From the IMG/VR virus record IMGVR_UViG_3300045970_000794, positions 248,001-312,000 of that record: 64,000 nt of DNA. One strand, given 5' to 3'. Of the stretch, positions 43,959 to 56,387 are shown in pieces. Under the pieces are notes generated by a model that saw nothing but the letters and a program-made list of their open reading frames with translations, searched no databases and was not told the DNA's origin. A program made the translations under genes and the position numbers. Position 1 is the stretch's first letter, and each line of letters opens with the position of its first letter.

Positions 43959-43964
43959 ACAAAG

Positions 43965-43988
43965 AAACCCAGTAGAGATACTGGGTTT
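43965..43988 (+). terminator. Intrinsic terminator
   Basis: AAACCCAGTA-GAGA-TACTGGGTTT plus T run. Confidence 0.85.
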
Positions 43989-44028
43989 TTTTTTGGTATG
44001 ATACACAATTTAAAAGATACACAATTTA

Positions 44029-44042
44029 TACACAAATGTGTA
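44029..44042. promoter_or_regulatory. TACAC-N4-GTGTA palindrome 1
   Basis: TACACAAATGTGTA, preceded by two ATACACAATTT half-sites. Confidence 0.6.
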
Positions 44043-44099
44043 CTTTCTGAAAAATATTAGTATTTATTAGTAAATAATATATTATTAATATTTTAATTT

Positions 44100-44738
44100 A
44101 TGCCATATAAAGATAAAGATAAAGAAAAACAATACCAAAAGGAATACAGAGAAAAGAATAAAGAATATTTCGAAGAATATCGAAAAATACATAAATATAA
44201 AAATAATAAATCGTATCAGGAATATAGTGAAAATAATAAAGAATCGTCCAAAAAATATTATAAAACTAAGGATAAAATTGTATTACAAAAAAAAGAATAT
44301 TATGAAAATAATAAAGAAAAATTAAAGCAATCTCAAAAGGAATGGCGAGAAAATAATAAAGATTATACGAATAAAATTGCTCGTAATAAATATAAAACAG
44401 ACCCATTATTTAAACTTAAACGAAGTATAAGGCGTATAATTGCTTTCAGTCTTAAAAATAAAGGACTCAAAAAAACCAGTAGAGCACACCTTATTTTAGG
44501 CTGTTCTTTTAATGATTTTAAAACTCATATTGAATCGAAATTTGAATATTGGATGACTTGGGATAACTATGGTTTATATAACGGTACGTTAAATTATGGA
44601 TGGGATATTGACCACATTATACCATTAGCAACGGCAATAAATGAAGATGAAGTGATTAGATTAAATCATTATACTAATTTGCGACCATTATGTAGTCATA
44701 TTAATCGGGTAATAAAACGTAATAAAATTGTGTATTAG
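44100..44738 (+). CDS. HNH homing-endonuclease-like protein (paralog of 4761-5363)
   Basis: GLYNGT.NYGWDIDHII.LATA..E.....LNHYTNL.PLCS.IN shared with 4761. Confidence 0.75.
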   Translation: MPYKDKDKEKQYQKEYREKNKEYFEEYRKIHKYKNNKSYQEYSENNKESSKKYYKTKDKIVLQKKEYYENNKEKLKQSQKEWRENNKDYTNKIARNKYKTDPLFKLKRSIRRIIAFSLKNKGLKKTSRAHLILGCSFNDFKTHIESKFEYWMTWDNYGLYNGTLNYGWDIDHIIPLATAINEDEVIRLNHYTNLRPLCSHINRVIKRNKIVY

Positions 44739-44944
44739 GTATAGCGTTTACTAACTTCCTCCACGTATTTAATAACCATTTGAGAATGTTCTGTGGCTTT
44801 TTTCACGTAGTCGACATTAGGGTAATAGATTTTTCTATTAGGGTAGTTTTTCTTAACGAATTCAATAAGTTCCATAAGAACATCATTAGTATTATCGAGA
44901 GCGGTAAGAATGAGTTCACGTTCATCTATTTCTAATTGATTCAT
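44735..44944 (-). CDS. Hypothetical protein
   Basis: 69 aa; follows P7. Confidence 0.6.
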   Translation of the reverse strand: MNQLEIDERELILTALDNTNDVLMELIEFVKKNYPNRKIYYPNVDYVKKATEHSQMVIKYVEEVSKRYT

Positions 44945-44954
44945 AAGATTATTG

Positions 44955-45000
44955 GTTAAAGGTTAATGCAAAGATAAGGATAATATTTCTATTATCCAAA
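44955..45000 (-). promoter_or_regulatory. Module P7 with GAAA hairpin spacer
   Basis: TTTG-GATAATA GAAA TATTATCC-T-TATCTTTG. Confidence 0.75.
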
Positions 45001-45011
45001 TTTTTTTGCAT

Positions 45012-45404
45012 TTATTTTAATTGGTTATAAAAAATACCTTTTTCAGCATTTTCAAGGTCTTTACCAGTTGCTCCACGAAACCAAGCATCCCAATAAGTTC
45101 TTTGACAACTAGAATCCATTAAACGACCAATAATGATTTCTCTAATGTTTTCTTTATATGCTTGCATATCGCTTAATAAGTGGTCTGCAATGTCTTCATT
45201 TGATAACATAATATTTTTTACTGTAACATCTTTATTTAGTTTTAAAAATGTTTCCTCATACTTAGCTTTAGCTTCTTCTAATGTTTTAGCATCCACAATA
45301 CACCATTCTTCGGAGTTAAAAGAAGCTTCTTCAACTGTATTGTACTGTGTTAATGTTTCACACTTACAATCATCATCAATATCATATCCTAATATAAATT
45401 TCAT
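45012..45404 (-). CDS. Hypothetical protein
   Basis: ATG 45404 (MKFILG); the track start is a promoter TTG. Confidence 0.6.
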   Translation of the reverse strand: MKFILGYDIDDDCKCETLTQYNTVEEASFNSEEWCIVDAKTLEEAKAKYEETFLKLNKDVTVKNIMLSNEDIADHLLSDMQAYKENIREIIIGRLMDSSCQRTYWDAWFRGATGKDLENAEKGIFYNQLK

Positions 45405-45414
45405 AGCAGTAAGT

Positions 45415-45484
45415 TTTAATTGGTTAATACTTTGCAAAGATACTACAAATAATCCACATTACCAAATATTATTTAATATATTTT
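45415..45484 (-). promoter_or_regulatory. Module P8
   Basis: -7 box 45442-45435. Confidence 0.85.
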
Positions 45485-45500
45485 ATTCCAGTAAATGGGG

Positions 45501-45532
45501 AAAGGCTGTCCCCCACTACAAGGACAGCCCTT
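45501..45532 (-). terminator. Terminator hairpin
   Basis: GGCTGTCC..GGACAGCC stem. Confidence 0.7.
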
Positions 45533-45563
45533 TAACAAAATAATCAACCTTAAAAATAATCAC

Positions 45564-46109
45564 TTATTTAAATAAATCAAAAATAATTTCTTCTTTACAA
45601 TAACTTGGTACTTCAATTTCCAGACTTATCACATCCCTAGCCCATGTACCAATTAATTCAACATTACCTTTTTTTGCTTCGTGGTTAATATGATAATCAC
45701 CGCCGCCACGTCCGTTGCCTTCGCAAGTCATTAAAGGAAGTGGGTGTATAATCCAACCGTCAACATCAACACATTTTCTTTTATCAATGAATTGATTTTT
45801 GCTGTGGTTAACCAAGTAAGGGAATATTTCTCTTTTGATAACTGTATCAACTGGATTAACTTTTGTTTTATCAGCACATCTACCATATACATTGGATTTA
45901 AGACCTTTGCATTCATCAGCATAATCACCAGCCCAAACAACCCTTTGTGGCTTCTGCATTATTAAACTTTCGAATGCACCAACAAATCTGTTTAACAACC
46001 AAGAATGTTCCATAAGGTTAAGACCATTGTCATAGTCATGAGAATATATCCATGCTTTGACTGTTCTTTTATTGTCGCCTAAAATGGCGGGGTTATAATA
46101 CTGTCCCAT
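45564..46109 (-). CDS. Hypothetical phage protein
   Basis: ATG 46109 (MGQYY); LMEHSW, HPLPLMT..GNGRGGGD. Confidence 0.7.
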   Translation of the reverse strand: MGQYYNPAILGDNKRTVKAWIYSHDYDNGLNLMEHSWLLNRFVGAFESLIMQKPQRVVWAGDYADECKGLKSNVYGRCADKTKVNPVDTVIKREIFPYLVNHSKNQFIDKRKCVDVDGWIIHPLPLMTCEGNGRGGGDYHINHEAKKGNVELIGTWARDVISLEIEVPSYCKEEIIFDLFK

Positions 46110-46119
46110 AATATAAAGT

Positions 46120-46171
46120 TTTAATTGGTTAATATGATACAAAGGTAAGTAAAATATTTTAATAAACCAAA
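46120..46171 (-). promoter_or_regulatory. Module P9
   Basis: -7 box 46147-46140. Confidence 0.75.
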
Positions 46172-46551
46172 CTTTTTAACACTTTTCTTTCAATTACTTC
46201 ACTTTTTGCAAAGAAACATTGTTTACCCGATAAACTTGGAACATAGTCACTAACAACATACTCAACTAATACGAATCCATGTTTTAAGATTTCTCTATTA
46301 TACCCTTTAAACCATTTACGCAATTTATTAATGGTATCACAAGTGGAATAATATTTACTAATCATACCACGATGTGAGACTGGTAAATCTTCATATAATA
46401 TTGGGTGCCCATCTGATTTCCAACTATGTTCACGACAAACCTTACGTTGAAAATCCAATACCTCCTCAACATTATTGAATGGTTTCTCATCTGCTCTATA
46501 AAAACCATCCTCATCGAATGGGCTTTCATAACGATATATAGTCATTTCCAT
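46159..46551 (-). CDS. Hypothetical protein
   Basis: 130 aa; carries the leader motif but no promoter. Confidence 0.65.
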   Translation of the reverse strand: MEMTIYRYESPFDEDGFYRADEKPFNNVEEVLDFQRKVCREHSWKSDGHPILYEDLPVSHRGMISKYYSTCDTINKLRKWFKGYNREILKHGFVLVEYVVSDYVPSLSGKQCFFAKSEVIERKVLKSLVY

Positions 46552-46584
46552 AATACGATTGGTTTAATTGATTAATACTAACAC

Positions 46585-47175
46585 TTATTTGTTATAAAAC
46601 GTTGTGTATGCTTTATAGCTTTTTGAAATTGTATTATGATAATCGTCTTCATTTTTTAAACTTAAAGCAGTTATTAAAACATTCAGAATTTGAACGAGTG
46701 AATATAATTTTAAATTTTCTTGGTTATTACAATCAATATAATTGGTTTTATTATTATAATAATAACCGTATGCGCTTGTCCTTGTAAGTTTATTAAATAC
46801 TTCATAAAATCTAATTAACAATTCATTTTCATTATAAAGTTCTTTAAACTCTGTTGCTAACTTGTTTTTTATATCATTAGTCCAATTATCAACAATCAAT
46901 GAGTAAATAACGCCAAAAAAATAGTTTGGATGTTCCCTTAATCCCATATCCCAACATCTTTGTATAAAATCTGAATGTGTGAAACCTCCAAAAGTATTTT
47001 TATTTCCAATTGTCATTGTTGGAATGAGTAAAAACCCATAATTTCGTTTATCCCTTTTAATACGATTATTTTCATCTAATAAGAATTTTGCTTCATTAAC
47101 ATTTGCAAATAACACCCAAAAAGGATTTGGGCTAAATGATTTACATAATAATAAACCGCTTTCAATATTTTCCAT
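46585..47175 (-). CDS. Hypothetical protein
   Basis: 196 aa; follows P10. Confidence 0.6.
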   Translation of the reverse strand: MENIESGLLLCKSFSPNPFWVLFANVNEAKFLLDENNRIKRDKRNYGFLLIPTMTIGNKNTFGGFTHSDFIQRCWDMGLREHPNYFFGVIYSLIVDNWTNDIKNKLATEFKELYNENELLIRFYEVFNKLTRTSAYGYYYNNKTNYIDCNNQENLKLYSLVQILNVLITALSLKNEDDYHNTISKSYKAYTTFYNK

Positions 47176-47186
47176 GATTTTTGGTT

Positions 47187-47275
47187 TTAGTATTGATTAA
47201 TATAATGCAAAGGTAATAAAAAAAAGTTGCTATCCAAATTTTTTAGCAACTTTTTTCATATTATTTAATATATTT
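47187..47275 (-). promoter_or_regulatory. Module P10 (13-bp inverted repeat over the -33 box)
   Basis: -7 box 47215-47208; arms 47220-47232 and 47244-47256. Confidence 0.8.
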
Positions 47276-47792
47276 TACCAACTTGAACCATATTCACAAT
47301 AGCTAGAAATACCATTTATCTCATCAGCTTTCAATTCTCTAATGATAGGTGCTAACATTTTAACGGTATCTTTAAGGTCACCAAAATAGCTTTCATCATA
47401 TTGAGTACCACCAAAAAAGAAACCACTTTGACTTGGCAATAATCTTTCAGCTACCTTTGGGCTTTTTGATTTAACAACTCTTCTACAAAGTTCAATCAAT
47501 GTTTCTAATTGATTTAAACTAACTTCATAATCGCCACAATCGTCATTACCCTCTTGAACGTTCTGAACAAACCAAGCATGAATTTGATTAGATTTGCACC
47601 AGTAAGCAACGTTTTCAGTGATTTCAGTTACTCGTTTGAATTTGATGTTAATTTGATGTTAATTTTGACTTTCTTTTCACCTTCATTTTCGATGTAAACT
47701 TTTCTTGAAATGTCAATAACACCTTTAACCTTATTGTGTTCGTATTGAGCACCAATGTAGGTTTTTTTACTTAAATACATATCTAGTCCCAT
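47275..47792 (-). pseudogene. MGLDMYL-type phage gene frameshifted by an 11-bp tandem duplication
   Basis: TTTGATGTTAA x2 at 47641-47662; removing one copy gives a 168-aa ORF with YWCKSNQIHAWFV. Confidence 0.8.
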
Positions 47793-47803
47793 AATATAAA
47801 GTT

Positions 47804-47874
47804 TTAGTATTGATTAATATAATGCAAAGATACAAAATATAATTCAAATAAACAAATATTATTTAATATATTTT
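47804..47874 (-). promoter_or_regulatory. Module P11
   Basis: -7 box 47832-47825. Confidence 0.85.
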
Positions 47875-47886
47875 TAATTATTTTAC

Positions 47887-48082
47887 ATAAATAATGGGTT
47901 AGGTAACCACACCTAACCCAAATAATCAATTAATCAATATACTAAACACACTATGAAGACGTACTCAGTTTCTTTAAATAGTTAGTAGCTACCTCCGAAT
48001 TCAACCCTTAGTAAATCTATTAAGTACAAGTCAGTAGAAAGTTATGTACTTCGAGGGTAATTGCTATCTAACTATAATTTCT
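47887..48082 (-). ncRNA. Candidate structured small RNA (about 195 nt)
   Basis: Own promoter P12, no ATG, long bulged stem (48068-75 with 47978-85; 48050-66 with 47986-99), terminator 47895-47920. Confidence 0.55.
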
Positions 48083-48087
48083 TTTTG

Positions 48088-48119
48088 CAAAGATACAACA
48101 AATAATTTACTTTACCAAA
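48088..48119 (-). promoter_or_regulatory. Module P12 (core only)
   Basis: TTTG 48119-16, N20, TATCTTTG 48095-88. Confidence 0.7.
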
Positions 48120-48514
48120 TATAATTGCAACGATTTATTAATTTCTTTTAAATAAGCTTCTGCTTCTGTTTTATTATATAAAGCATATCTATCCATTTGC
48201 TTACCATTATAAGGTTTTAATGTAACAACATCAATTACTTTGCCATCTCTATTAACAAAATAATAATAAGTTGAGCAAGCTGGCATTCCACTTGCTAATG
48301 ATTTACCCCTAGATGGAATGTATTGATTTGATTTCAATTCAAACTGTGGCGGTATTGCTGCTAAATAAAATACTACTTTTGATACATCAGATTTACATAC
48401 TACAGTTCTGAATTTTCTACCTGTGATTTTAACATCCTCTTTAGTGAAATTACTCTTTTCATAAGTGATTCCTTTTCTTGTAAATTTCTCGGGTAATACT
48501 GTAAATGTTTTCAT
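48107..48514 (-). CDS. Hypothetical protein
   Basis: ATG 48514 (MKTFTV). Confidence 0.65.
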   Translation of the reverse strand: MKTFTVLPEKFTRKGITYEKSNFTKEDVKITGRKFRTVVCKSDVSKVVFYLAAIPPQFELKSNQYIPSRGKSLASGMPACSTYYYFVNRDGKVIDVVTLKPYNGKQMDRYALYNKTEAEAYLKEINKSLQLYLVK

Positions 48515-48523
48515 GGTATAAAG

Positions 48524-48594
48524 GTTTAATTGATTAATATAATGCAAAGATACAATAAATAATTTAATCTACCAAATATTATTTAATATATTTT
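48524..48594 (-). promoter_or_regulatory. Module P13
   Basis: -7 box 48552-48545. Confidence 0.85.
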
Positions 48595-48622
48595 TAATAT
48601 ATTTTTAATTATTTTTCAAAAT

Positions 48623-48653
48623 AAAAGGGTTAGTCTACGGAACCAACCCTTTT
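48623..48653 (-). terminator. Terminator hairpin
   Basis: AAAAGGGTT..AACCCTTTT. Confidence 0.65.
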
Positions 48654-48690
48654 AACTCGACACCTGCCGCCAACTGAGTAATTAAATTAC

Positions 48691-49062
48691 TCAATATTTT
48701 GAATCCTTAACAGCCTTTTGAATTAGCTTAATAGCTTCAATACACTGCTCGGGAGTAATAGCCTTATACTTTTTATTACATTTGATATGATTGTAAATTT
48801 TTTCAGCTTCACAACCACTTGGTAAATTGGTATTCCAATCCTTTTCTTTTGCAAATCCAACTCCAATTCGTGTGAATTTTGGAAAGCCAACAATAGCTTG
48901 GTCTTTATGTAACTTCACTCTGAAAACCCAATAGTTTTCATCGATTGGTGGGGTTATCATTATAACTCCACGGTTGCCATTACTGAAAATTGAACTCACA
49001 TCACCTTTGAAATATTCATTGAATTCAACTACTAACTTAGGTACTTCTGTTTTTGTTTCCAT
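48691..49062 (-). CDS. Hypothetical phage protein
   Basis: 123 aa; TPPIDENYW..GFPKF..DWNTNLP. Confidence 0.7.
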   Translation of the reverse strand: METKTEVPKLVVEFNEYFKGDVSSIFSNGNRGVIMITPPIDENYWVFRVKLHKDQAIVGFPKFTRIGVGFAKEKDWNTNLPSGCEAEKIYNHIKCNKKYKAITPEQCIEAIKLIQKAVKDSKY

Positions 49063-49073
49063 GATAAATAGTT

Positions 49074-49142
49074 TTTATTGATTAATATAATGCAAAGATA
49101 AGTAAAATATTTTAACCCACCAAATAAAAATGCAATTATTTT
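49074..49142 (-). promoter_or_regulatory. Module P14 (class B)
   Basis: -7 box 49100-49093. Confidence 0.85.
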
Positions 49143-49480
49143 TACATTGTTGAAATTATTTCCTCAAGTATAGCAATCCTTTTTTTAGTATAGAATATAT
49201 TATGTGGGAACCAATTAAGGTTTTTATCCCTTTTACGTTTCGGACAATATTTGTCTAACTCTATATAAACGTTTTCATCCTCATAAAAGCTAAAAACTTT
49301 AGATTTAGCATCCCATGTATCTATATTCAATATTTCACAAGCACGACTAATAGCAAGACATATACCATTATAGTAAATAGGGTACCCTTTTTGAATTTTA
49401 TTATCTTCAACACGTTCTTTAATAAACTTTAACGCCTCTTGATAAATCTTTTTCCTTAATTTAGTTGTATTTCTTGGCAT
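49142..49480 (-). CDS. Hypothetical protein, paralog of 60826-61185
   Basis: LRK.IY..L....G.C..I..IEL..Y.P..WFP..KRI.ILE. Confidence 0.65.
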   Translation of the reverse strand: MPRNTTKLRKKIYQEALKFIKERVEDNKIQKGYPIYYNGICLAISRACEILNIDTWDAKSKVFSFYEDENVYIELDKYCPKRKRDKNLNWFPHNIFYTKKRIAILEEIISTM

Positions 49481-49492
49481 GATATAAAAGGT

Positions 49493-49579
49493 TTATTGAT
49501 TAATACTTTGCAAAGATAATAAAAAGATAGTTACTAACCTAATTTTTTAGTAACTATTTTTCATATTATTTAATATATT
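49493..49579 (-). promoter_or_regulatory. Module P15 (11-bp inverted repeat)
   Basis: -7 box 49518-49511; arms 49527-37 and 49547-57. Confidence 0.8.
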
Positions 49580-49886
49580 ACCAAACACTTCCAAATAAGT
49601 TTTTGTTAATATCAACTTTAGTCTTACACCAGTCAATTATTGTTTCAGCATAATAACTTGTTGTTAAGTCACTAAGGAACATATACAATTCTCTATATGT
49701 ATTACCAGTACCAACTGTTACAACCCTACGTGTAAACTCTTCAGCTTTACTTTGGTCACTGGAACTCCTTGTACCTTTTGAATAGTCCCATTCTTTTCCA
49801 ATAACAGTAATTGCTTTTTTTGTTGTTTCTACAGTGATAATGCCACCTTTAGCATATTCACCAATTTTCCAAGTCTTTGTTGCCAT
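49578..49886 (-). CDS. Hypothetical protein
   Basis: ATG 49886 (MATKTWK). Confidence 0.65.
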   Translation of the reverse strand: MATKTWKIGEYAKGGIITVETTKKAITVIGKEWDYSKGTRSSSDQSKAEEFTRRVVTVGTGNTYRELYMFLSDLTTSYYAETIIDWCKTKVDINKNLFGSVW

Positions 49887-49895
49887 AATATAATA

Positions 49896-49966
49896 GTTTA
49901 ATTGATTAATATGATGCAAAGATAAAACAAATAAATGAGAAAACCTAATATTATTTAATATATTTT
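49896..49966 (-). promoter_or_regulatory. Module P16
   Basis: -7 box 49924-49917. Confidence 0.85.
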
Positions 49967-49980
49967 TATGCGCACACATG

Positions 49981-49994
49981 TACACCTTTGTGTA
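49981..49994. promoter_or_regulatory. TACAC-N4-GTGTA palindrome 2
   Basis: GTACACCTTTGTGTAC. Confidence 0.6.
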
Positions 49995-50185
49995 CGTGAT
50001 TGTTAGCTTTTAATAATAGCCAAATAAAAATAAATACATCCCTACAACCAACGATAATAGAGCGGTAAATAATATACTGCATTTAACAACCAAACAACTT
50101 GGTTAATCGGGTGGAAGTGGTATAACTAATGTCCCTAATGAAAAAACAATTGCTAATACTAATAGAAATAATATAAGTCCCATGA

Positions 50186-50554
50186 TTAAAGAATATTAGT
50201 TGAAATAAAAATTGCGGCTGGTTTAACATCTAAATAGATTACTAATCCATTACCACGTTTAATACCATACTTAGCATATGGCATATTAACAACACGCACC
50301 AATGGCTTTCTTACACCACTTGCTCTCCAAATGGCTTCGAGGTCTTCTTGAGAAAGAACATGGAATGTATTTCTACCTTCGGTTCTGAATATAGGTTTAC
50401 CCCTTTCAGCATCTTTAATTATCCTTAATTCAATTGATAACTTATTTGCTTTATTAGCATTAGATTTCCATTTAAAAGAATCCACTGTTAACTTTTCCCT
50501 TTTCTTATCGAGTGCCTTTATTTCAGCAGTCAATTCATCAATGTTCTTTTTCAT
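50186..50554 (-). CDS. Hypothetical protein
   Basis: ATG 50554 (MKKNIDE). Confidence 0.6.
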   Translation of the reverse strand: MKKNIDELTAEIKALDKKREKLTVDSFKWKSNANKANKLSIELRIIKDAERGKPIFRTEGRNTFHVLSQEDLEAIWRASGVRKPLVRVVNMPYAKYGIKRGNGLVIYLDVKPAAIFISTNIL

Positions 50555-50558
50555 ACCT

Positions 50559-50732
50559 TTATGTTGTTTTAAAATTACCACACGATTTACATCCATTTTT
50601 ACGACCATCACCTGGTGCATATAAACACCCTCGACATTCATACCAATCAATCACTCTAGGATTTTTTTTAGGTTTGATTTTAATACCCTTTATATTTGCT
50701 ACAATGCTTGGTTTAATTATAATACCTTCCAT
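50559..50732 (-). CDS. 57-aa Cys-rich protein (not in ORF track)
   Basis: MEGIIIKP..WYECRGC..GCKSCGN; fills the gap between neighbours. Confidence 0.5.
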   Translation of the reverse strand: MEGIIIKPSIVANIKGIKIKPKKNPRVIDWYECRGCLYAPGDGRKNGCKSCGNFKTT

Positions 50733-50737
50733 GATTT

Positions 50738-51205
50738 CTATTTTTTAAGTAATTGAATATAACCAACCCAATATTCCATAACATCAAATTTTTCGCTTGG
50801 TTCTGTATCATCGTCAGTATCATTACACAAATCTTGAAAATCATTTAATGAGTATACATCAACTATACAATTAAATGCACTATGAACATCTTTTAATGTA
50901 TTGAACTTTTCATTTGCATATGTTTCAACAATCTTACGACCACTACGATTATCTCTAATTGGAACTAAAGCAATATGTGTTTCATATACCTTTTCTTTTT
51001 CATCAATGGTAATACCATGTCTATTAAGAAAAGTAGTCCATTGATGATATAATAAAGGGTGACAAGCTGTAGCCCCAACAAATTTACCGTCTTTAAGACG
51101 AATTTCACCCATTGAATCCCCAACTTTGAATCCAGTTCCTTCTAACTCGACATCACCTTTTTCAGCGAAGGCAACTATTTTTGTTTTGGTTGTTTTGAAT
51201 TTCAT
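50738..51205 (-). CDS. Hypothetical protein
   Basis: 155 aa; follows P17. Confidence 0.65.
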   Translation of the reverse strand: MKFKTTKTKIVAFAEKGDVELEGTGFKVGDSMGEIRLKDGKFVGATACHPLLYHQWTTFLNRHGITIDEKEKVYETHIALVPIRDNRSGRKIVETYANEKFNTLKDVHSAFNCIVDVYSLNDFQDLCNDTDDDTEPSEKFDVMEYWVGYIQLLKK

Positions 51206-51214
51206 AACAATTTA

Positions 51215-51285
51215 GTTTAATTGGTTAATAATACTACAAAGATAATAAATTAAATTGACATTACCAAATATTATTTAATATATTT
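51215..51285 (-). promoter_or_regulatory. Module P17
   Basis: -7 box 51244-51237. Confidence 0.85.
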
Positions 51286-51291
51286 TAATTA

Positions 51292-51489
51292 TTATTTTAA
51301 TTCTTTTACATCCTTTGATATCACTACATATTCTTTAAGAAGCTCCTCATATAATGCCTCATCTTGCTCATGCAGCTTATTAAATAATACGCCAATGTTG
51401 CTATCTTTGGGGGTTAATGATTTATTTTTAATTGCTCCCATTTTACCCCGAATAAGGAATTCCAGTTTTTTAAGGTCTTTACTACTCAT
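51292..51489 (-). CDS. Hypothetical protein
   Basis: 65 aa ORF. Confidence 0.6.
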   Translation of the reverse strand: MSSKDLKKLEFLIRGKMGAIKNKSLTPKDSNIGVLFNKLHEQDEALYEELLKEYVVISKDVKELK

Positions 51490-51501
51490 CGCTAATAATA
51501 T

Positions 51502-52107
51502 TTAAACGTTATCAATTTTCTTTAACTCATTATCAATGTAATCATATACCTCCTTGGCAATGTCACCTGTAACTTCTGAATAAACGCCAGTTCTGAACCG
51601 CTCTTCTGTAGCATTAACATGAACCTCAAGCTTTTTTCCATTATAATCCACATCGTAAATCTCAATCTTAGTGGTAAGAGTCATTGAACTATTTTTAGCT
51701 TTCTTTTCTTTTACCCTAGCCAAGACATCCATAACACCTCGCTTTGCGATATAATTAACATCCATTACCGTGAAACCATTAGCATACATTAAAATGATTT
51801 CTGATATTGGAACGGAGGTTACAATTAATTTATCTGGATTTCTCCAATCTGAACCCATTATTAACGTTTGTCCATCATCCTCTGGATTAGGAATCAAATT
51901 CACATATTGGAAATTGTATGTTACTGTGTCACCACTCATGTCGTCATCAATCTGAACATCAAATAACGGCTCATCATTCATATCGTTAACCGTGTCCCAA
52001 TCCGAAAAACTTTCGAACTCTATAACTTGAACAGGTAAGTTGGTACCCACTACTAAATATTGTTTCTCCTTAACATTTAGGTATACTTTATCAATTGTTG
52101 CATCCAT
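51502..52107 (-). CDS. Hypothetical protein
   Basis: 201 aa; follows P18. Confidence 0.6.
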   Translation of the reverse strand: MDATIDKVYLNVKEKQYLVVGTNLPVQVIEFESFSDWDTVNDMNDEPLFDVQIDDDMSGDTVTYNFQYVNLIPNPEDDGQTLIMGSDWRNPDKLIVTSVPISEIILMYANGFTVMDVNYIAKRGVMDVLARVKEKKAKNSSMTLTTKIEIYDVDYNGKKLEVHVNATEERFRTGVYSEVTGDIAKEVYDYIDNELKKIDNV

Positions 52108-52119
52108 GGTTTATATTGT

Positions 52120-52183
52120 TTTAAATGATTAATTACAAAGGTATGTAAAATAATTCTTATTACCAAATCTTATTTAATATATT
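52120..52183 (-). promoter_or_regulatory. Module P18
   Basis: -7 box 52143-52136. Confidence 0.75.
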
Positions 52184-52519
52184 ATCAGTTTTTTCCACGG
52201 GCTTCTTTATGCTATTCAACTCAATTCTTTTTGGTTCAATTGTTACCTTTACATATTCACCAATAATTAATGTATTCTGGTTTTTAACATATGCATTAAC
52301 ACCATTACGAATATATTTTTCGGCACTATCCAATTGAACTACATTGGTACAACTGTCCACAACCTTTTTAATCCGTAAGGAATAACGCTTGAGGAATTCA
52401 TCCAATTCAATTTTATACTTCGCTTGTCTGACCTCAGAATCAAAACTATTAAATGTATCGCTAATTGTTTTAATTACACTATCAAACGTATCATTCGCTT
52501 TATTAAGAAGACTTTCCAT
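52160..52519 (-). CDS. Hypothetical protein
   Basis: 119 aa; follows P19. Confidence 0.65.
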   Translation of the reverse strand: MESLLNKANDTFDSVIKTISDTFNSFDSEVRQAKYKIELDEFLKRYSLRIKKVVDSCTNVVQLDSAEKYIRNGVNAYVKNQNTLIIGEYVKVTIEPKRIELNSIKKPVEKTDNILNKIW

Positions 52520-52531
52520 AGTGTAAAAAAG

Positions 52532-52601
52532 GTTAATTGGTTAATATGATGCAAAGATAAAACAAATAAATGACAATTCCAAATATTATTTGATATATTT
52601 T
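52532..52601 (-). promoter_or_regulatory. Module P19
   Basis: -7 box 52559-52552. Confidence 0.85.
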
Positions 52602-52714
52602 TTATAATGTGAAAATTATTAAATTTCCCTAGGGGACAAAACTCTTACATCCCTTGATAACCCATTATATACATTTTATCTATATCCTTCTGAAAGCCCA
52701 TATGAAAATAAATT

Positions 52715-52765
52715 GAAAATAATTCACTTTTTATTTGGTAGTTTAATTTATTTTTTGTACCTTTG
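52715..52765 (+). promoter_or_regulatory. Module P20 (class B)
   Basis: -7 box TACCTTTG 52758-52765. Confidence 0.8.
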
Positions 52766-52918
52766 TTCTGTCATTATAAGACATGTTGGTACCACCACAG
52801 TACCAAGAGGTATACTCCAACCTACACCATATTTTTTTTACCATATATTTAGATATATACATAACCTACATACGTATCAATAACAAAAAGGGAATGAGTA
52901 TTACACCCACCCCCTTAA
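52766..52918 (+). ncRNA. Candidate small RNA, copy A
   Basis: TGTCATTA..AGAC.TG and AGGTATACTCCAAC shared with 54922-54976; TTGGTAC-N7-GTACCAA hairpin. Confidence 0.4.
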
Positions 52919-52940
52919 AGAAAATAATATTAACTAAAAA

Positions 52941-53921
52941 CTATCTTAATACATAATCATTTTGACCTGTAACTTCTAATGCAAAATTAAATGATTGCAT
53001 ATTAGTTCTATAATTAGTACCAACACTTAAACTTTCAAGTTGACCATTCTCACGTTTTGGGTGTGATTTAGCATGATTAGTCCAACTAGTTACCCCATTG
53101 TGTAATCCAAAAATTGTATTACCTTTTTGGTTCATTTCTTTTTTAATGTGGGAATATAATGTGTCCATTGCATTTAAAGTTTTACCACTATCAACACCAA
53201 CCTTAGCAGTCAATCTATCAACACCTAATAATTCTCTTACTAAACCATCAACTAAATTTTGTGTACAGGCTGTTGAGTGGAATTTATTATAAATCTCAAT
53301 TTGTTTCATACTTTCGTTTAATGCTAAACGAATTAAACTTGGTAACTCAACCATTTTACCCTCTAACGACGCACTATGTTTTAACTTCATTTCACCCCTT
53401 TTATAAAAACGAAAAAATTGATTTGAACAGCTCATTACCATATCTGAAATTCCTACACCTAATCCAGTGCTACCATCATTAGAATCAATAATGGTAATGT
53501 ACTTTTTAATGCTATCATTACCAACTTTTGAAAATCCATCAATAGCTAACTGAATAAACGTTTTACGCCCACCATTCAAACAACCAGCTTTGCTTACATT
53601 TAACTCACCAAAACCATTCATACCACGTAACACCAATTCAACAACATCATCATTTTGGCTCACATGATAACTAGCTTTGGTAGTGTTAATGATTTCCATA
53701 CTTTGAGTATTTAATAACCCAAAATATGTGGTGCGAATTGATTTCTGTTTTTTAGCTTTACCAAATAAGCCAACCATTGGAACTTTCTCAATACGAAAAT
53801 TTAAACCATTGTCAACCAAGATTTTTTTCACTTGATTTTTAAGTGCTCTTTCTTGCTTTTTAGCATTATTAGTTTTTTGTGCCATAGCTTCTTTTTCAAA
53901 ATTTACGATTTCTGTTTTCAT
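52941..53921 (-). CDS. DUF932-family protein
   Basis: AGCLNGGRKTFIQL, DSNDGS..G..MVMSCSNQF, KHSAS; ATG 53921. Confidence 0.75.
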   Translation of the reverse strand: MKTEIVNFEKEAMAQKTNNAKKQERALKNQVKKILVDNGLNFRIEKVPMVGLFGKAKKQKSIRTTYFGLLNTQSMEIINTTKASYHVSQNDDVVELVLRGMNGFGELNVSKAGCLNGGRKTFIQLAIDGFSKVGNDSIKKYITIIDSNDGSTGLGVGISDMVMSCSNQFFRFYKRGEMKLKHSASLEGKMVELPSLIRLALNESMKQIEIYNKFHSTACTQNLVDGLVRELLGVDRLTAKVGVDSGKTLNAMDTLYSHIKKEMNQKGNTIFGLHNGVTSWTNHAKSHPKRENGQLESLSVGTNYRTNMQSFNFALEVTGQNDYVLR

Positions 53922-53930
53922 GATATATAG

Positions 53931-54000
53931 TTTTAATTGATTAATATAATGCAAAGGTAAGTAAAATATTTTAATCTACCAAATATTATTTAATATATTT
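53931..54000 (-). promoter_or_regulatory. Module P21
   Basis: -7 box 53959-53952. Confidence 0.85.
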
Positions 54001-54013
54001 TCAAATTATTTTA

Positions 54014-54676
54014 CTAATGTTGTACGAAACACACGTTATTCTTAGTTATACAGTAAGTACACTCCAAACCACATTTAATGTTTTTACTACTTGTAACAGG
54101 GCAAATAAATGATTTATGATTTGCTTTTAACTCATTGCAATACTCAATACTACCAAAATTCAATTTACCATTGATGAAACTACTTATTAAATTGAAATTG
54201 CTATTAGTCTTAATAACACTAAAATCTAATAAACTTTCTACCTTGGTATATACATAAAATTTAATATGTGGAAATAAACCAATAATATCATTCCAAAAAT
54301 CAATATATGATTGACTGAAAAAGTCACCACTAGAATGAATCCTTACCACAGTCCTTTTTGTTTCACTTAATTGTGTTACAATTAATTCCTTTAATAAACT
54401 TGGATTGTTTAAAAACAATTCATGATTAACAGTACGATACAATTCAGTATCTACATATTGAACCTCAGCCTTTTTTGCATAGCAACTTGCTTTGCAGTCC
54501 ACACAATTTAAACAAGTTTTTACACTTGGTAAATCAAAGATAAGAATATTATGTAACTTGCTATTACCATTAACTAATCTATTCTTATTAATATAGATGT
54601 AATTAAATAGTAATTCACGAGTATTGGTTTGTTTGCTGTAATCTCTGAATGTCCTAGATAAATCAAAATTGTTCAT
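54014..54676 (-). CDS. GP88-like (phage Gene 88) Cys-cluster protein
   Basis: FDLPSVKTC..C..C..CYAKK, VRIHSSGDF, FYVYTK, C..C..C; ATG 54676. Confidence 0.6.
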   Translation of the reverse strand: MNNFDLSRTFRDYSKQTNTRELLFNYIYINKNRLVNGNSKLHNILIFDLPSVKTCLNCVDCKASCYAKKAEVQYVDTELYRTVNHELFLNNPSLLKELIVTQLSETKRTVVRIHSSGDFFSQSYIDFWNDIIGLFPHIKFYVYTKVESLLDFSVIKTNSNFNLISSFINGKLNFGSIEYCNELKANHKSFICPVTSSKNIKCGLECTYCITKNNVCFVQH

Positions 54677-54689
54677 AGTGTTTCGGTTT

Positions 54690-54759
54690 AAGTGATTAAT
54701 AACATATTGCAAAACTACAAAAAATATTTCATATAAACAAATATTATTTAATATATTTT
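54690..54759 (-). promoter_or_regulatory. Module P22
   Basis: -7 box TAGTTTTG 54717-54710. Confidence 0.75.
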
Positions 54760-54870
54760 TCATATACTATATAAGATATTAATTGTTGGCTCAAACCCTC
54801 TGAAACCCCTATGGCAACTCAAAAACATTCTTATTCCGTGAATAAGAATGATAGCAAATTAAAATATTTT

Positions 54871-54921
54871 GAAAATAATTCACTTTTTATTTGGTAGATT
54901 AAATTATTTTCACTACCTTTG
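54871..54921 (+). promoter_or_regulatory. Module P23 (class B)
   Basis: -7 box TACCTTTG 54914-54921. Confidence 0.8.
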
Positions 54922-55020
54922 TATTGTCATTAAGACGTGACGATACCCACAACGGTCTCGGAAGGTATACTCCAACATGCAATGTTGTCGGTGGAACACT
55001 CCAATATGCCCGCTATTTTC
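54922..55020 (+). ncRNA. Candidate small RNA, copy B (3' end uncertain)
   Basis: Shares motifs with copy A; CAACAT-GCA-ATGTTG hairpin. Confidence 0.4.
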
Positions 55021-55278
55021 CTATGGGGAAATATTTGGAATTGTAAATTATTATTTGTAAGTTTGCATATGATTTAAATGGGACTGCGGTCCCACTGAAT
55101 TTGCTCGCTCATTAAATAAATGGGTTAGCCTTGCCATTCCTATTACTGAATATATCAGCGATACGGATTCCTATACCCATTTTTTTGCGAATTTGGGCAT
55201 CGGCATAGCTATTTCCAAAAATTTCTGGCGAAAAATATTAACAAAAATTTTTGCACAAGTCCGATTCCTATTAGAATA

Positions 55279-55314
55279 TACTATGGAATCTACTGTGGAA
55301 TATACTATGGAATA
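55279..55314. repeat. 12-bp tandem repeat x3
   Basis: TACTATGGAATC TACTGTGGAATA TACTATGGAATA. Confidence 0.85.
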
Positions 55315-55425
55315 TATTGTAAATTCCCTATAGGTGTAGGTAATTTTCTTAGGGGCTATAAAGGTGATTTTATATCATTTTTATGGGGAGTTATAGCTAT
55401 GGGAAAAATAAAACGATGAAGCATA

Positions 55426-55439
55426 TACACAATTGTGTA
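55426..55439. promoter_or_regulatory. TACAC-N4-GTGTA palindrome 3
   Basis: TACACAATTGTGTA. Confidence 0.6.
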
Positions 55440-55626
55440 CTTATGCTGGCATAGAGGCTCTTAGGAATCTCCATTTTTTACCACATTTTCCCACAAAGCC
55501 CCATACTTACCCCCATATAGTAAGGGGAACGTGGTTTAGAATGTATAGGGGCATATCTTATTATATTAGGCTATATAAAGCTCTGTAATGGATTAAAAAG
55601 TATATGGTGGGGCAGAAGTATAAAGA

Positions 55627-55640
55627 TACACATTTGTGTA
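55627..55640. promoter_or_regulatory. TACAC-N4-GTGTA palindrome 4
   Basis: TACACATTTGTGTA. Confidence 0.6.
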
Positions 55641-55650
55641 TTAGAGGGGC

Positions 55651-55932
55651 TTAAAATGAGTTAGTATTATCTAGTTCATTTTGTATAAATTGTATGGCTT
55701 CCATGGGTGACAATTTATTAATATCTCTATATAGCAGTTCATGAGATTGTCTAAGGAGGTGTTTTTGTATAGTTGATTCATCGAATGATTTGGATATAGA
55801 TTTAATGGACTCCAAGTACCTTACCCAATTAGAGTTGTTATTATAGTAGCCTAAATTTTCAGAGAATGTTTTAGCTATTCTATCATACTCGATATATTTG
55901 AATAGATTATATTGTTTATCTTCAAGTGCCAT
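55651..55932 (-). CDS. Hypothetical protein
   Basis: 93 aa, bracketed by palindromes 4 and 5. Confidence 0.6.
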   Translation of the reverse strand: MALEDKQYNLFKYIEYDRIAKTFSENLGYYNNNSNWVRYLESIKSISKSFDESTIQKHLLRQSHELLYRDINKLSPMEAIQFIQNELDNTNSF

Positions 55933-55953
55933 AATAATTTTTTATTGAATAAG

Positions 55954-55967
55954 TACACATTTGTGTA
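55954..55967. promoter_or_regulatory. TACAC-N4-GTGTA palindrome 5
   Basis: GTACACATTTGTGTAC, 21 nt upstream of ATG 55932. Confidence 0.6.
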
Positions 55968-56213
55968 CCATGGGATGGGTATTATTCGGTAATATATATA
56001 CCATCAAATTCTTCATCACAAATACAATCATAGTCTTTAATAAATCTTTTTGATTGTGCTATTATTTTATGACCATTGACGACCATTGAAAATTCTATGT
56101 AGTAATACATTTTTCTTCTCTAAGAACTTTAATTTCGAAAAATTCTTGGGTTTTTCTTTGACCTTCTTCTGAGTCAAGGAACTTTTTTAATTCATCTATA
56201 TAGCTCATAATAT

Positions 56214-56387
56214 TTATTTATTTTCGATATGATTATGCATTAATTTCAATACCCAAGCGTTTTCAAACTCATACAGTCCACATTCTTCATTAGCTTTTTC
56301 TTCGGTATCATAATATTTTATTTTACCTTCTTTATTTTTCATGAAGTCCATATTTCTAAGGTCTATTATTACAAATTGTCCTTTCAT
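56214..56387 (-). CDS. 57-aa hypothetical protein (not in ORF track)
   Basis: MKGQFVIIDLRNMDFM..; TAATG-coupled to the upstream ORF. Confidence 0.5.
   Translation of the reverse strand: MKGQFVIIDLRNMDFMKNKEGKIKYYDTEEKANEECGLYEFENAWVLKLMHNHIENK

What the first reader, a model, noticed from the sequence alone, without database searches (positions are those of the whole stretch)
44001..55967. Five intergenic copies of the palindrome TACAC-N4-GTGTA
Seen: at 44029, 49981, 55426, 55627 and 55954, all non-coding, with extra ATACACAATTT half-sites at 44001 and 44017. My rough expectation at this base composition is well below one per window (about 0.05). Three cluster at the ori-like region and two bracket gene 55651-55932. 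Inference: the site for a dimeric DNA-binding protein (repressor, origin binder or site-specific recombinase).
Basis: partly seen in the sequence, partly recalled or inferred. Interest (0 to 1): 0.65.

Follow-up and report, generated by a model that had tools for sequence, protein, structure and literature searches.

The report
Conserved operator palindrome of jumbo phages
The five TACAC-N4-GTGTA copies are real and are a regulatory DNA word conserved in a family of uncultivated freshwater giant phages. It is most likely the docking site of a two-part DNA-binding protein, still unidentified, that acts near the early genes and an origin-like region.

Summary
There are five exact TACAC-N4-GTGTA sites in the window (shuffles give 0.02). 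They are the only five in the whole 362-kb phage genome, and all lie within 12 kb of non-coding DNA in the early-gene region.

The motif is the core of a longer dyad, (t)ATGTACACA-WW-TGTGTACAT(a). It recurs at 1-6 copies per record in about 20 related jumbo-phage records, almost always between genes and at orthologous places. The extended 20-mer is practically absent from 185,000 prokaryote genomes.

Five observations point to recognition of double-stranded DNA by a dimer:
- The central AAAT/ATTT flips between orthologues.
- Lone half-sites are enriched beside full sites.
- A diverged strain keeps the palindrome while its flank is riddled with changes.
- In relatives the site sits about 36.5, 46.5 or 56.5 bp upstream of a phage promoter box, which is helical phasing.
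- In four loci it sits about 23 bp upstream of a host-type promoter.

Two or three copies always border a conserved non-coding, origin-like module.

The binder is unknown. ORF 55651-55932 is an ORFan absent from relatives, so it is not the binder. The only lead is a weak one: a sigma-adjacent ~110-aa protein with an Xre-like fold.

I found no evidence for recombination. This is a new member of a known kind, and interest is moderate.

The parts
44029..44042 (.). Palindrome copy 1 (TACACAAATGTGTA). It lies 58 nt upstream of the HNH endonuclease gene, just after an intrinsic terminator.
44001..44027 (+). Two direct lone half-sites ATACACAATTT (44001-44011 and 44017-44027), in the same orientation as the left arm of copy 1.
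   Evidence: Half-sites are enriched 3.7-fold near full sites across the clade.
44726..44735 (-). Lone half-site ATACACAATT at the 3' end of the HNH gene.
43968..43995 (+). Canonical hairpin plus T9 terminator (aaacccagta..tactggg ttttttttt) ending the upstream operon. It shows what this phage's real terminators look like.
   Evidence: read directly from the sequence
44100..44738 (+). Free-standing HNH (EndoVII-like) homing-type endonuclease gene with N-terminal KEY repeats. A late-type promoter-like box TATTTATTA lies at 44061-44069.
   Evidence: There are 9 paralogues in the genome. Relatives of this gene sit next to the palindrome in 11 other loci.
49981..49994 (.). Palindrome copy 2 (TACACCTTTGTGTA). 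It lies 32 nt upstream of a host-type promoter with a degenerate -33 box (49917-49948, minus strand) that drives gene 49578-49886.
   Evidence: The orthologous site in relative G003 (L087:11322) precedes the orthologous gene.
49578..49886 (-). 102-aa gene of unknown function downstream of copy 2. It is conserved together with the site in G003.
55426..55439 (.). Palindrome copy 3 (TACACAATTGTGTA, a perfect 14-mer), with extended imperfect arms AGCATA/TATGCT. It sits on the origin-like side of the CCAC boxes.
   Evidence: It is unchanged in a diverged strain whose adjacent flank carries 9 changes.
55627..55640 (.). Palindrome copy 4, 11 nt after the stop codon of ORF 55651-55932.
55954..55967 (.). 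Palindrome copy 5, 22 nt before the start codon of ORF 55651-55932.
55651..55932 (-). 93-aa ORFan bracketed by copies 4 and 5. It is a variable insert and not the binder.
   Evidence: No homologue in 5.8 billion proteins and no Pfam or PHROG hit. In relatives, other unrelated small ORFs or HNH genes occupy the same bracketed place.
54764..55650 (.). Conserved non-coding, origin-like module containing:
- two host-type promoters firing towards the palindromes (54890-54921 and 55034-55065, + strand);
- an A/T box (55213-55237);
- a 12-bp tandem repeat x4 (55274-55320);
- phased CCAC boxes (55471-55499).
   Evidence: The same layout is present in G001, G003, G005 and others. No Rfam match.
54926..55000 (+). 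About 70-nt small RNA candidate driven by promoter 54890-54921 (a second copy lies at about 52770-52845). It is part of the module, not of the palindrome.
52941..54763 (-). Genes downstream of the module: GP88-family (54014-54763) and DUF932 (52941-53954). The DUF932 gene is syntenic with the module in G003.

Best explanation
The five sites are copies of a 16-20-bp dyad operator, (t)ATGTACACA-WW-TGTGTACAT(a). A sequence-specific protein dimer reads it on double-stranded DNA. The protein belongs to this clade of uncultivated freshwater jumbo phages (T4-like portal, Bacteroidota-type promoters) and is probably phage-encoded.

Shown here:
- The word is non-random and confined to non-coding DNA.
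- It is conserved in sequence, not merely in pairing, at orthologous places in relatives whose portal proteins are only 59-67% identical.
- It is functionally symmetric.
- It is accompanied by lone half-sites.
- In relatives it sits at helically phased distances upstream of promoters.

Inferred:
- The bound dimer acts on RNA polymerase from about -50, -60 or -70, like a class-I activator or an anti-activator, at a handful of promoters.
- The 2-3 copies that border the origin-like non-coding module in the early region control transcription that converges there. One stream is the early operon reading in from one side. The other is two host-type promoters firing inward from the other side.
- That control may be coupled to replication start, and the copies may be paired by looping.

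In this genome all five copies lie in the 20-kb block that holds 24 of the 67 host-type (early) promoters.

The binder is not identified. The only lead is a ~110-140-aa protein always encoded next to a phage sigma-70 gene (here at genome 338,685-339,107, outside the window). Its C-terminal domain models as an Xre/lambda-cI-like helix-turn-helix, and in at least 17 relatives its own gene carries the palindrome upstream.
For: Non-randomness:
- 5 sites against 0.02 expected, and 5 of 5 genome copies lie within 12 kb of 362 kb.

Conservation:
- G001 has 3 sites, G003 has 5 and G005 has 1.
- Nineteen further records have 1-6 sites each, while the reversed control word gives 0-1.
- Spacers are almost only AAAT, ATTT or AATT.
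- The flanks extend the dyad: A 74% and T 81% at positions -2 and -1.

Non-coding bias:
- 18 of 81 sites lie inside ORFs of 60 aa or more, although such ORFs cover 80% of the DNA (P about 2e-28).

Orthology:
- 49981 and G003 L087:11322 precede the same gene with the spacer flipped.
- The near-identical loci L094 and L137 also differ by a flip.

Half-sites:
- 16 lone half-sites lie within 80 nt of full sites, where 4.3 are expected.
- There are three direct half-sites at 44001-44037.

Selection:
- A contig of run X3 has 9 changes in 55409-55422 and none in 55426-55439.

Phasing:
- The distance from palindrome centre to the ATATTTATW box clusters at 35.5-37.5, 45.5-48.5 and 56.5-57.5 (21 unique sites, Rayleigh p about 2e-5).
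- In one locus (L139) a single palindrome sits 45.5 and 46.5 bp from boxes on both sides.
- In four loci the centre is 22.5-23.5 bp before a host-type -33 box.
- ATATTTATW behaves as a promoter: 38 of 148 copies lie 21-30 nt before ORF starts.

Clade specificity:
- The 20-mer occurs only 5 times in 596 Gb of prokaryote genomes, in unrelated taxa.

Binder lead:
- AF2 model with pLDDT 87.6.
- Most of the top 50 structural neighbours are Xre/cI-type HTH domains (C-proteins, Aca1/7/10/11, DdrO, cI-NTD), with Z 4-5.7.
- Of the records at least 90% complete, the three with 3 or more sites all encode this protein. The three that lack it have one site each.
Against: - No binding protein is shown. The structural match of the lead is below the tool's trust level (Z < 8), and it has no Pfam or PDB sequence match.
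- That protein's gene has no palindrome upstream in this genome or in G006. Its invariable pairing with a sigma gene could equally mean it is a sigma cofactor.
- In this genome the five sites are not at the phased positions seen in relatives. The estimates are about -37 for 44029 and about -75 for 49981. No promoter at all lies between 55954 or 55627 and the next gene.
- Most relatives' loci were fetched with the motif itself as the search pattern. Invariance of the arms and of the flanking G/C is therefore partly ascertained, and compensatory variants could not be seen.
- The phasing statistic ignores relatedness among loci.
- There are no expression data: no RNA run holds the region.
Confidence: 0.55

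Rival explanations
1. The sites bind a replication initiator or an origin-control protein. On this reading the palindromes are part of the phage origin, comparable to the lambda O-protein dyad iterons. The copies elsewhere are secondary.
For: - Two or three copies always border a conserved non-coding module. The module has inward-firing promoters, phased CCAC boxes that loosely resemble DnaA boxes, lineage-specific tandem iterons and an A/T box.
- In four relatives the module carries perfect chromosomal-type parS sites within about 450 nt of the palindromes.
Against: - The most frequent conserved position in the clade (19 loci) is far from the module. It lies between a sigma gene cluster and the ~110-aa gene, phased to a promoter.
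- Sites 44029 and 49981 are 5-11 kb from the module.
- No origin has been mapped, and GC skew shows no turn here.
- This genome has no parS.
Confidence: 0.15
2. The sites act at the RNA level, as a conserved hairpin in early transcripts. The hairpin could be a processing, stability or antitermination site, like boxB in nut, read by an RNA-binding protein.
For: - Sites 55954 and 55627 lie in short spacers inside an operon with no promoter of their own.
- The word folds as a 5-9-bp stem with a 4-nt loop, at -3.8 to -11.2 kcal/mol.
- There are few copies per genome, in early regions, as for nut sites.
Against: - Loop orientation relative to the transcribed strand flips between orthologues and between near-identical loci.
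- Lone half-sites, which cannot fold, are enriched beside full sites.
- Ten-bp phasing to promoters is a property of duplex DNA.
- The one 1-mismatch orthologue seen (L172) is not compensated.
- No U-tract follows the stem, whereas the phage's real terminator at 43968-43995 is canonical.
Confidence: 0.12
3. The sites are recombination or cassette boundaries. On this reading the palindromes are crossover points, PeSL-like or attC-like, or targets of the HNH homing endonucleases, where ORFan and HNH genes are captured.
For: - Unrelated small ORFs or HNH genes fill the space between paired palindromes in different phages. In G001 the two copies are 55 bp apart with nothing between them.
- HNH genes lie within 400 bp of a site in 11 loci, where I estimate about 1.6 would be expected.
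- A short HNH type reads through the palindrome in its last codons.
Against: - No recombinase is nearby.
- Contigs of four runs show no joints, inversions or deletions at the palindromes. The joints seen are all at the repeated promoters.
- Many sites are single and sit upstream of conserved genes at phased distances.
- Only 1 of the 9 HNH paralogues in this genome is near a site.
- Contigs drop rare variants, so this evidence against the rival is weak.
Confidence: 0.1
4. The sites are the operator of a host (Bacteroidota) transcription factor that the phage has borrowed.
For: The phage relies on host-type sigma-A promoters for its early genes. No classical HTH or RHH domain is detectable in the phage.
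Against: - The extended 20-mer occurs only 5 times in 185,579 species' genomes. It is spread over unrelated phyla, with none in a plausible host group repeatedly.
- The known Bacteroidetes LexA motifs are different: GGA-N5-TCC and CTAA-N5-TTAG (PMC8565304).
- A host regulon could use looser sites that this exact scan misses.
Confidence: 0.06

Closest known systems
P2/P4 late promoters with the upstream dyad TGT-N12-ACA, bound by the Ogr/Delta activators (PMC3931495). The position near -55 is from my own knowledge.
   Same: - A short dyad present in only a few copies per phage genome.
- It lies tens of bp upstream of phage promoters that lack a normal upstream box.
- The extended word here literally reads TGT-ACACAWWTGTGT-ACA, that is TGT-N12-ACA.
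- The estimated centre is at about -50, -60 or -70.
   Different: - No Ogr_Delta (PF04606) or Mor (PF08765) homologue in any frame of this genome.
- All 14-20 positions are conserved here, not just the outer triplets.
- Different phage type (lytic-looking jumbo myovirus) and a Bacteroidota-type host.
- In this genome the sites are in the early region, not before the late operons.
Autoregulated Xre-type dimers with palindromic operators: the C-proteins of restriction-modification systems (C-boxes) and the Aca repressors of anti-CRISPR operons.
   Same: - In 17 or more relatives a small protein's gene is preceded by the palindrome.
- That protein's modelled domain most resembles C.EcoT38IS, C.Kpn2I, Aca1/7/10/11 and the AcrIIA15 N-terminal domain.
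- There are few sites per genome.
   Different: - The fold match is weak (Z up to 5.7) and there is no sequence-family match.
- The operator lies 35-57 bp upstream of the promoter box rather than over it.
- The gene is always paired with a sigma factor gene.
- There is no site before the orthologue in this genome.
PeSLs (promoter-early stem-loops) of T4-type phages (PMC2839356, PMC4122927).
   Same: - Repeated intergenic regulatory elements in the plastic, ORFan-rich early regions of T4-related phages.
- They bracket variable small genes.
   Different: - PeSLs number about 50 per genome. They are composites of a host-type promoter with a variable, often G/C-rich terminator stem.
- Here the PeSL-like elements are the 32-bp host-type promoter repeats (24 in 20 kb, and the source of assembly joints).
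- The palindrome is a separate element, invariant in sequence, with 1-6 copies. It is not fused to those promoters in this genome and has no terminator features.
parS/ParB centromere sites and the lambda O-protein origin dyads.
   Same: - 14-19-bp palindromes in a few clustered copies next to an origin-like region.
- They are conserved across relatives.
   Different: - The sequence is unrelated to parS (TGTTTCACGTGAAACA).
- True parS sites occur separately in the same module of four relatives and are absent here.
- Many copies of the palindrome lie at promoters far from the module.
Lambda nut boxB hairpins.
   Same: Few copies, a short stem with a small loop, and location in early transcription units.
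   Different: Strand symmetry, lone half-sites and helical phasing all argue for recognition of duplex DNA.

Membership tests
Operator of a dimeric transcription factor | Dyad symmetry with conserved half-sites | tested here: met
   Half-site (AT)GTACACA, centre WW. 80 unique sites and whole-genome scans.
Operator of a dimeric transcription factor | Restricted to non-coding DNA and conserved at orthologous places | tested here: met
   P about 2e-28 for ORF avoidance. Orthologous pairs. Flank diverged but site kept in run X3.
Operator of a dimeric transcription factor | Fixed or helically phased position relative to a promoter | tested here: inconclusive
   Met in relatives: 36.5, 46.5 or 56.5 bp to ATATTTATW, and 22.5-23.5 bp to the host-type -33 box. 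Not clearly met for the five sites of this window. Transcription starts are not mapped.
Operator of a dimeric transcription factor | A cognate DNA-binding protein | tested here: inconclusive
   No HTH_3, HTH_17, RHH_1, Ogr or Mor in the genome, and about 40 neighbouring ORFs have no DNA-binding domain. One weak structural lead.
Intrinsic (rho-independent) terminator | Stable G+C-rich stem directly followed by a U-tract | tested here: not met
   Stems fold at -3.8 to -11.2 kcal/mol and none of the five sites has an adjacent T-run. In relatives the T-runs start 8-15 nt away or belong to separate hairpins.
PeSL cassette | Composite of a host-type early promoter and a stem-loop, tens of copies per genome | tested here: not met
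   Five copies. The nearest host-type promoter is at least 32 nt away and not fused to the palindrome. Definition taken from PMC2839356.
Site-specific recombination site (att, dif or attC-like) | A recombinase gene nearby and rearranged forms ending in the site | tested here: not met
   No recombinase domains and no joints at the sites in four runs. Only contigs were available, so rare forms could be missed.
parS centromere | Match to the tGTTNCACGTGAAACa consensus | tested here: not met
   No parS with 2 or fewer mismatches in the genome. The palindrome has a different sequence.
Host LexA (SOS) box of Bacteroidetes | GGA-N5-TCC or CTAA-N5-TTAG dyad | tested here: not met
   The sequence differs (PMC8565304).
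P2-type Ogr/Delta-dependent promoter | An Ogr/Delta zinc-finger activator is encoded | tested here: not met
   PF04606 has no match at E <= 1 in six frames. The TGT-N12-ACA pattern itself is met.

The most novel reading that the evidence does not exclude
The paired palindromes are the gates of a conserved replication and segregation control module of lytic jumbo phages. The module comprises inward-firing host-type promoters, a small RNA gene, phased CCAC boxes, iterons and, in some lineages, genuine parS sites.

On this reading the protein bound at the gates sets when the module fires. It also makes the spot between the gates a preferred landing place where ORFan and HNH gene cassettes are captured and exchanged between phages.
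Probability: 0.12. Interest if true: 0.75.

Novelty: new member of a known kind. Interest (0 to 1): 0.45.

Why it matters
Almost nothing is known about how uncultivated jumbo phages of Bacteroidota-type hosts time their gene expression or start replication.

This work yields a concrete cis-element that is specific to the clade. It also yields two promoter classes, a candidate origin module and one candidate regulator. Together these turn 'hundreds of ORFans' into hypotheses that can be tested by EMSA or DAP-seq, reporter fusions and origin mapping.

The element also marks orthologous regulatory nodes, which helps align otherwise unalignable early regions across this phage family.

If the binder is the sigma-adjacent protein, it would define a new sigma-plus-activator pair, widespread in metagenomes (237 clusters at 50% identity).

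Tried and rejected
- Chance: rejected.
- A longer repeat or MITE: the flanks are unrelated.
- Known RNA families and tRNAs: none in the window or in 54600-56100, even at E <= 1.
- Restriction-site avoidance as an explanation: TGTACA and GTAC occur at expected frequency.
- ORF 55651-55932 as the binder: it is an ORFan with no relatives, so it cannot be the conserved partner of a conserved site.
- GP88-like gene as a handle to find relatives: nothing found.
- Exact motif strings in the literature: no paper holds them.
- Bacteroidetes LexA box: a different motif.
- A -10-like TATAAT plus CCCCTAA context upstream of the palindrome: seen in G001 and here at 55627, but not general.
- The palindrome as a host-type -7 box (CACATTTG against TAnnTTTG): there is no -33 partner, and in this genome the orientation is opposite to the genes.
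- Pfam scan of about 40 early-region ORFs for DNA-binding domains: none found.
- Ogr, Mor, HTH_3, HTH_17 and RHH_1 searched in six frames of the genome: none found.
- Foldseek search of PDB with both models of the ~110-aa protein: no significant hit.
- Profile searches of that protein against PDB sequences and Pfam: nothing.
- RNA expression: no RNA run holds the region.
- Phylogenetic profiling of all genes against motif presence: not attempted, because most relatives are fragments.

Full report
**1. The observation**

An exact search finds TACAC-N4-GTGTA five times in the window, at 44029, 49981, 55426, 55627 and 55954. One hundred dinucleotide-preserving shuffles give a mean of 0.02.

The window is bases 248,001-312,000 of a 362,102-bp virus record with direct terminal repeats. 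The same five are the only copies in that whole genome. The same arms with any other spacer from 0 to 11 occur 0-1 times, and relaxing to 1-2 mismatches adds nothing above chance.

The two extra half-sites ATACACAATT(T) at 44001 and 44017 are real. A further one lies at 44726-44735 on the other strand. Beyond about 15 nt the flanks of the copies are unrelated.

**2. What genome this is**

- The window encodes a T4-like portal and a large terminase.
- The nearest cultured phages share only about 36-38% portal identity.
- G+C is about 30%.
- The runs that hold the sequence are pond and freshwater metagenomes.

Sixty-seven matches to TTTG-N19-21-TAnnTTTG occur in the genome, against about 10 in shuffles. 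That pattern combines the flavobacterial sigma-A -7 box TAnnTTTG (documented in PMC9723704) with the Bacteroidetes -33 TTTG box, which I take from my own knowledge. Twenty-four of the matches lie in genome 290-310 kb, the same stretch that holds all five palindromes. That stretch is a run of small ORFs on one strand without Pfam domains. It looks like the early region of a phage that infects a Bacteroidota-type host.

A second promoter-like word, ATATTTATW, occurs 148 times. Thirty-eight copies lie 21-30 nt before ORF starts, and the word is nearly absent from the early block. I take it as the phage's middle or late promoter box. The phage encodes two sigma-70-family proteins.

**3. Conservation**

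Relatives were found through the portal.
- A complete 353-kb relative (G001) has 3 copies of the palindrome.
- A 158-kb fragment (G003) has 5.
- A third fragment (G005) has 1. All of these are between genes.

A scan of 2.9 million viral contigs with GTACACAWWTGTGTAC returned 76 loci. About 45 belong to low-G+C jumbo-phage contigs, often with 2-3 copies 160-600 bp apart. The rest are three unrelated phage groups in which the word lies inside a conserved coding gene; I take these as chance hits multiplied by relatedness.

Whole-record scans of 19 of the records behind these loci gave 1-6 sites each, against 0-1 for the reversed control word. The spacers are almost only AAAT, ATTT or AATT.

Over 80 unique sites the symmetrised flanks add A (74%) and T (81%) outside a G. 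This gives (t)ATGTACACA-WW-TGTGTACAT(a). The G and the AWWT centre are partly ascertained by the search pattern, whereas the outer AT is not.

ORFs of 60 aa or more cover 80% of these loci, but only 18 of 81 sites lie inside one. Several of those ORFs are obviously spurious (P about 2e-28).

The extended 20-mer occurs only five times in 596 Gb of genomes from 185,579 prokaryote species, in unrelated phyla. The word therefore belongs to this phage clade.

**4. Duplex DNA or RNA**

Four observations favour recognition of duplex DNA by a symmetric protein.
- Site 49981 and its orthologue in G003 precede orthologous genes, but the spacer reads AAAG in one and ATTT in the other relative to the gene. 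Two nearly identical loci (L094, L137) differ by the same flip.
- Lone half-sites, which cannot fold, are 3.7-fold enriched within 80 nt of full sites: 16 seen where 4.3 are expected. The window's own example is the triple direct array at 44001-44037.
- A diverged strain in another metagenome has nine substitutions in the 14 bases before 55426 and none in the palindrome.
- In relatives the distance from the palindrome centre to the ATATTTATW box falls at 35.5-37.5, 45.5-48.5 and 56.5-57.5 bp. That is 21 unique sites with Rayleigh p about 2e-5 for a 10-10.5-bp period, uncorrected for relatedness.

In one locus a single palindrome sits 45.5 and 46.5 bp from boxes on both sides. In four loci the centre is 22.5-23.5 bp before the -33 box of a host-type promoter. 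If ATATTTATW occupies the place of the -7 box (-12 to -5 in PMC9723704), the centres fall near -50, -60 and -70, and the four host-type cases near -59. Those are positions typical of activators that touch polymerase from upstream.

As hairpins the sites are weak (-3.8 to -11.2 kcal/mol) and lack U-tracts. The phage's real terminator at 43968-43995 is canonical.

**5. Where the sites sit**

The commonest conserved place in the clade (19 loci) lies between a phage sigma gene cluster and a ~110-aa gene. This genome has those genes at 338.7-340.8 kb but carries no palindrome there. The complete relative G006 likewise has none.

The second conserved place is the one in this window. Two or three copies sit at the edge of a 0.5-1-kb non-coding module. 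From the far side of the module, one or two host-type promoters fire towards the palindromes:
- window 54890-54921 and 55034-55065;
- the same arrangement in G001, G003, G005 and many others.

The module also contains:
- phased CCAC boxes (window 55471-55499);
- an A/T box (55213-55237);
- lineage-specific tandem repeats (55274-55320);
- in four relatives, perfect parS sites.

Between the outer two palindromes, different phages carry different things. G001 has nothing (55 bp). Others have unrelated small ORFs or an HNH gene. Here the insert is the 93-aa ORFan 55651-55932.

HNH endonuclease genes of the family of 44100-44738 lie next to a palindrome in 11 other loci. In three of them the same palindrome-to-ATATTTATW cassette lies upstream. 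Only one of the nine paralogues in this genome is near a site.

**6. Who binds**

ORF 55651-55932 has no homologue in 5.8 billion proteins and is absent from relatives that keep the site. It cannot be the conserved partner.

No DNA-binding domain was found in about 40 neighbouring ORFs. No HTH_3, HTH_17, RHH_1, Ogr/Delta or Mor domain was found in any frame of the genome.

The one lead is the ~110-aa family.
- It has 237 clusters in metagenomes.
- It is encoded directly after a sigma-70 gene in every contig examined.
- Its C-terminal 83 residues model at pLDDT 87.6.
- The nearest solved folds are overwhelmingly Xre/lambda-cI-type HTH domains: C.EcoT38IS, Aca1/7/10/11, DdrO, the cI N-terminal domain and POU-specific domains.
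- However, those matches reach only Z 4-5.7, below the tool's trust level. Foldseek, Pfam and PDB sequence searches are blank.

Of the records at least 90% complete, the three with 3 or more sites all encode this protein. The three without it carry a single site each, two of them with an atypical ATAT centre. This correlation is confounded by phylogeny.

The protein could just as well be a sigma cofactor. I put the chance that it is the binder at roughly one in three.

**7. Recombination**

Contigs of four metagenome runs laid on 53000-57500 show joints only at the repeated host-type promoters (about 53940-54000, 54700-54760, 54860-54930 and 56560-56600) and none at the palindromes. Contigs hide rare forms, so this is weak evidence against recombination. 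Together with the absence of any recombinase, it leaves that reading without support.

**8. Comparison with known systems**

The closest working analogues are upstream dyads read by phage activators.
- The P2 late promoters carry TGT-N12-ACA and depend on Ogr (PMC3931495). The present word literally fits TGT-N12-ACA, but no Ogr homologue exists in this genome.
- The palindromic operators of small autoregulated Xre dimers (C-proteins, Aca) are the other close analogue.

The PeSL cassettes of T4-type phages (PMC2839356, PMC4122927) resemble the 32-bp promoter repeats of this early region rather than the palindrome.

The element is therefore a new member of a known kind: an operator-type dyad in a clade where no regulation has been described.

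**9. Verdict**

- Confidence in the operator model is 0.55.
- The direction of regulation and the identity of the protein remain inferred.
- Interest is moderate (0.45). It rises if the link to an origin and cassette-capture module proves true.

Noticed in passing
window 52770-52845 (+) and 54926-55000 (+); also genome positions ~4804 and ~332082: A family of candidate small RNAs about 70 nt long, each behind a consensus host-type promoter. Each has two hairpins whose stems differ in sequence between phages but still pair. The 3' part is conserved, G(A/G)GGUAUACUCCAACCUACCUUAUAU, and often ends in a U-run. I found 15 distinct copies in relatives. No Rfam match.
   Followed up: partly
relatives: L165:9980 and 10043; L095:466 and 529; L108:2814, 2838, 4182; L109:560 and 598: Perfect or near-perfect chromosomal-type parS sites (TGTTTCACGTGAAACA) lie in the non-coding module within about 450 nt of the palindromes in four related phage contigs. 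This genome has none with 2 or fewer mismatches.
   Followed up: partly
whole genome G000 (362 kb), window included: GATC, CCGG and CGCG occur zero times. By my estimate from base composition, GATC would be expected about 1000 times. CTTAAG occurs 0 times against about 43 expected, and CTGCAG 0 against about 10. This is a strong signature of restriction-site avoidance.
   Followed up: partly
window 41500-56600: Twenty-six near-identical 32-bp host-type promoters (TTTGGTAGATTAAATTATTTnnnnTAnCTTTG) stand before nearly every small early ORF, much like PeSLs. Metagenome contigs break and mis-join exactly at them (about 53940-54000, 54700-54760, 54860-54930, 56560-56600).
   Followed up: partly
genome-wide; e.g. 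window 2191-2436, 10515-11300, 26930-27658 upstream regions: ATATTTATW is a second promoter-like word, with 148 copies. Thirty-eight lie 21-30 nt before ORF starts. It occurs outside the early block, so it is presumably the middle or late promoter, perhaps read by the phage's own sigma factors.
   Followed up: partly
genome 338001-341500 (locus L166) and 103421-104185, outside the window: Two phage-encoded sigma-70-family genes (regions 1.2, 2, 3 and 4 are detected). An SmpB-like ORF (L166:2901-3362, minus strand) lies beside one of them. The sigma gene followed by a ~110-aa gene is a conserved pair with 237 protein clusters in metagenomes.
   Followed up: partly
window 44100-44738 and eight other places in the genome: Nine paralogues of an HNH endonuclease with lysine/tyrosine-rich N-terminal repeats. 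In relatives (L105, L128, L129, L152) a short HNH type is inserted inside the origin-like module and reads through the palindrome in its last codons (..MYTNVY..).
   Followed up: partly
window 55471-55499, 55274-55320, 55213-55237: Three elements of the non-coding module:
- CCAC boxes at 10-11-bp spacing (loosely DnaA-box-like, 7 of 9 positions);
- a 12-bp tandem repeat x4;
- an A/T box, CCAAAAATTTnnGnnGAAAAAT.
The boxes are conserved across relatives, whereas the tandem repeats are specific to each lineage.
   Followed up: partly
window 14085-16607 (+) and 32066-33595 (+): The phage carries a full-length ClpB-like double AAA+ chaperone gene and a gene for a periplasmic-binding-domain protein with an OmpA domain. 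Both are unusual auxiliary genes.
   Followed up: no
window 49995-50185 (-) and 55985-56211 (-): Several very short ORFs (26-34 aa, one with a hydrophobic membrane-like sequence) fill spacers that an ORF list with a 50-aa cut-off shows as empty. Some 'intergenic' DNA near the sites may therefore be coding.
   Followed up: no
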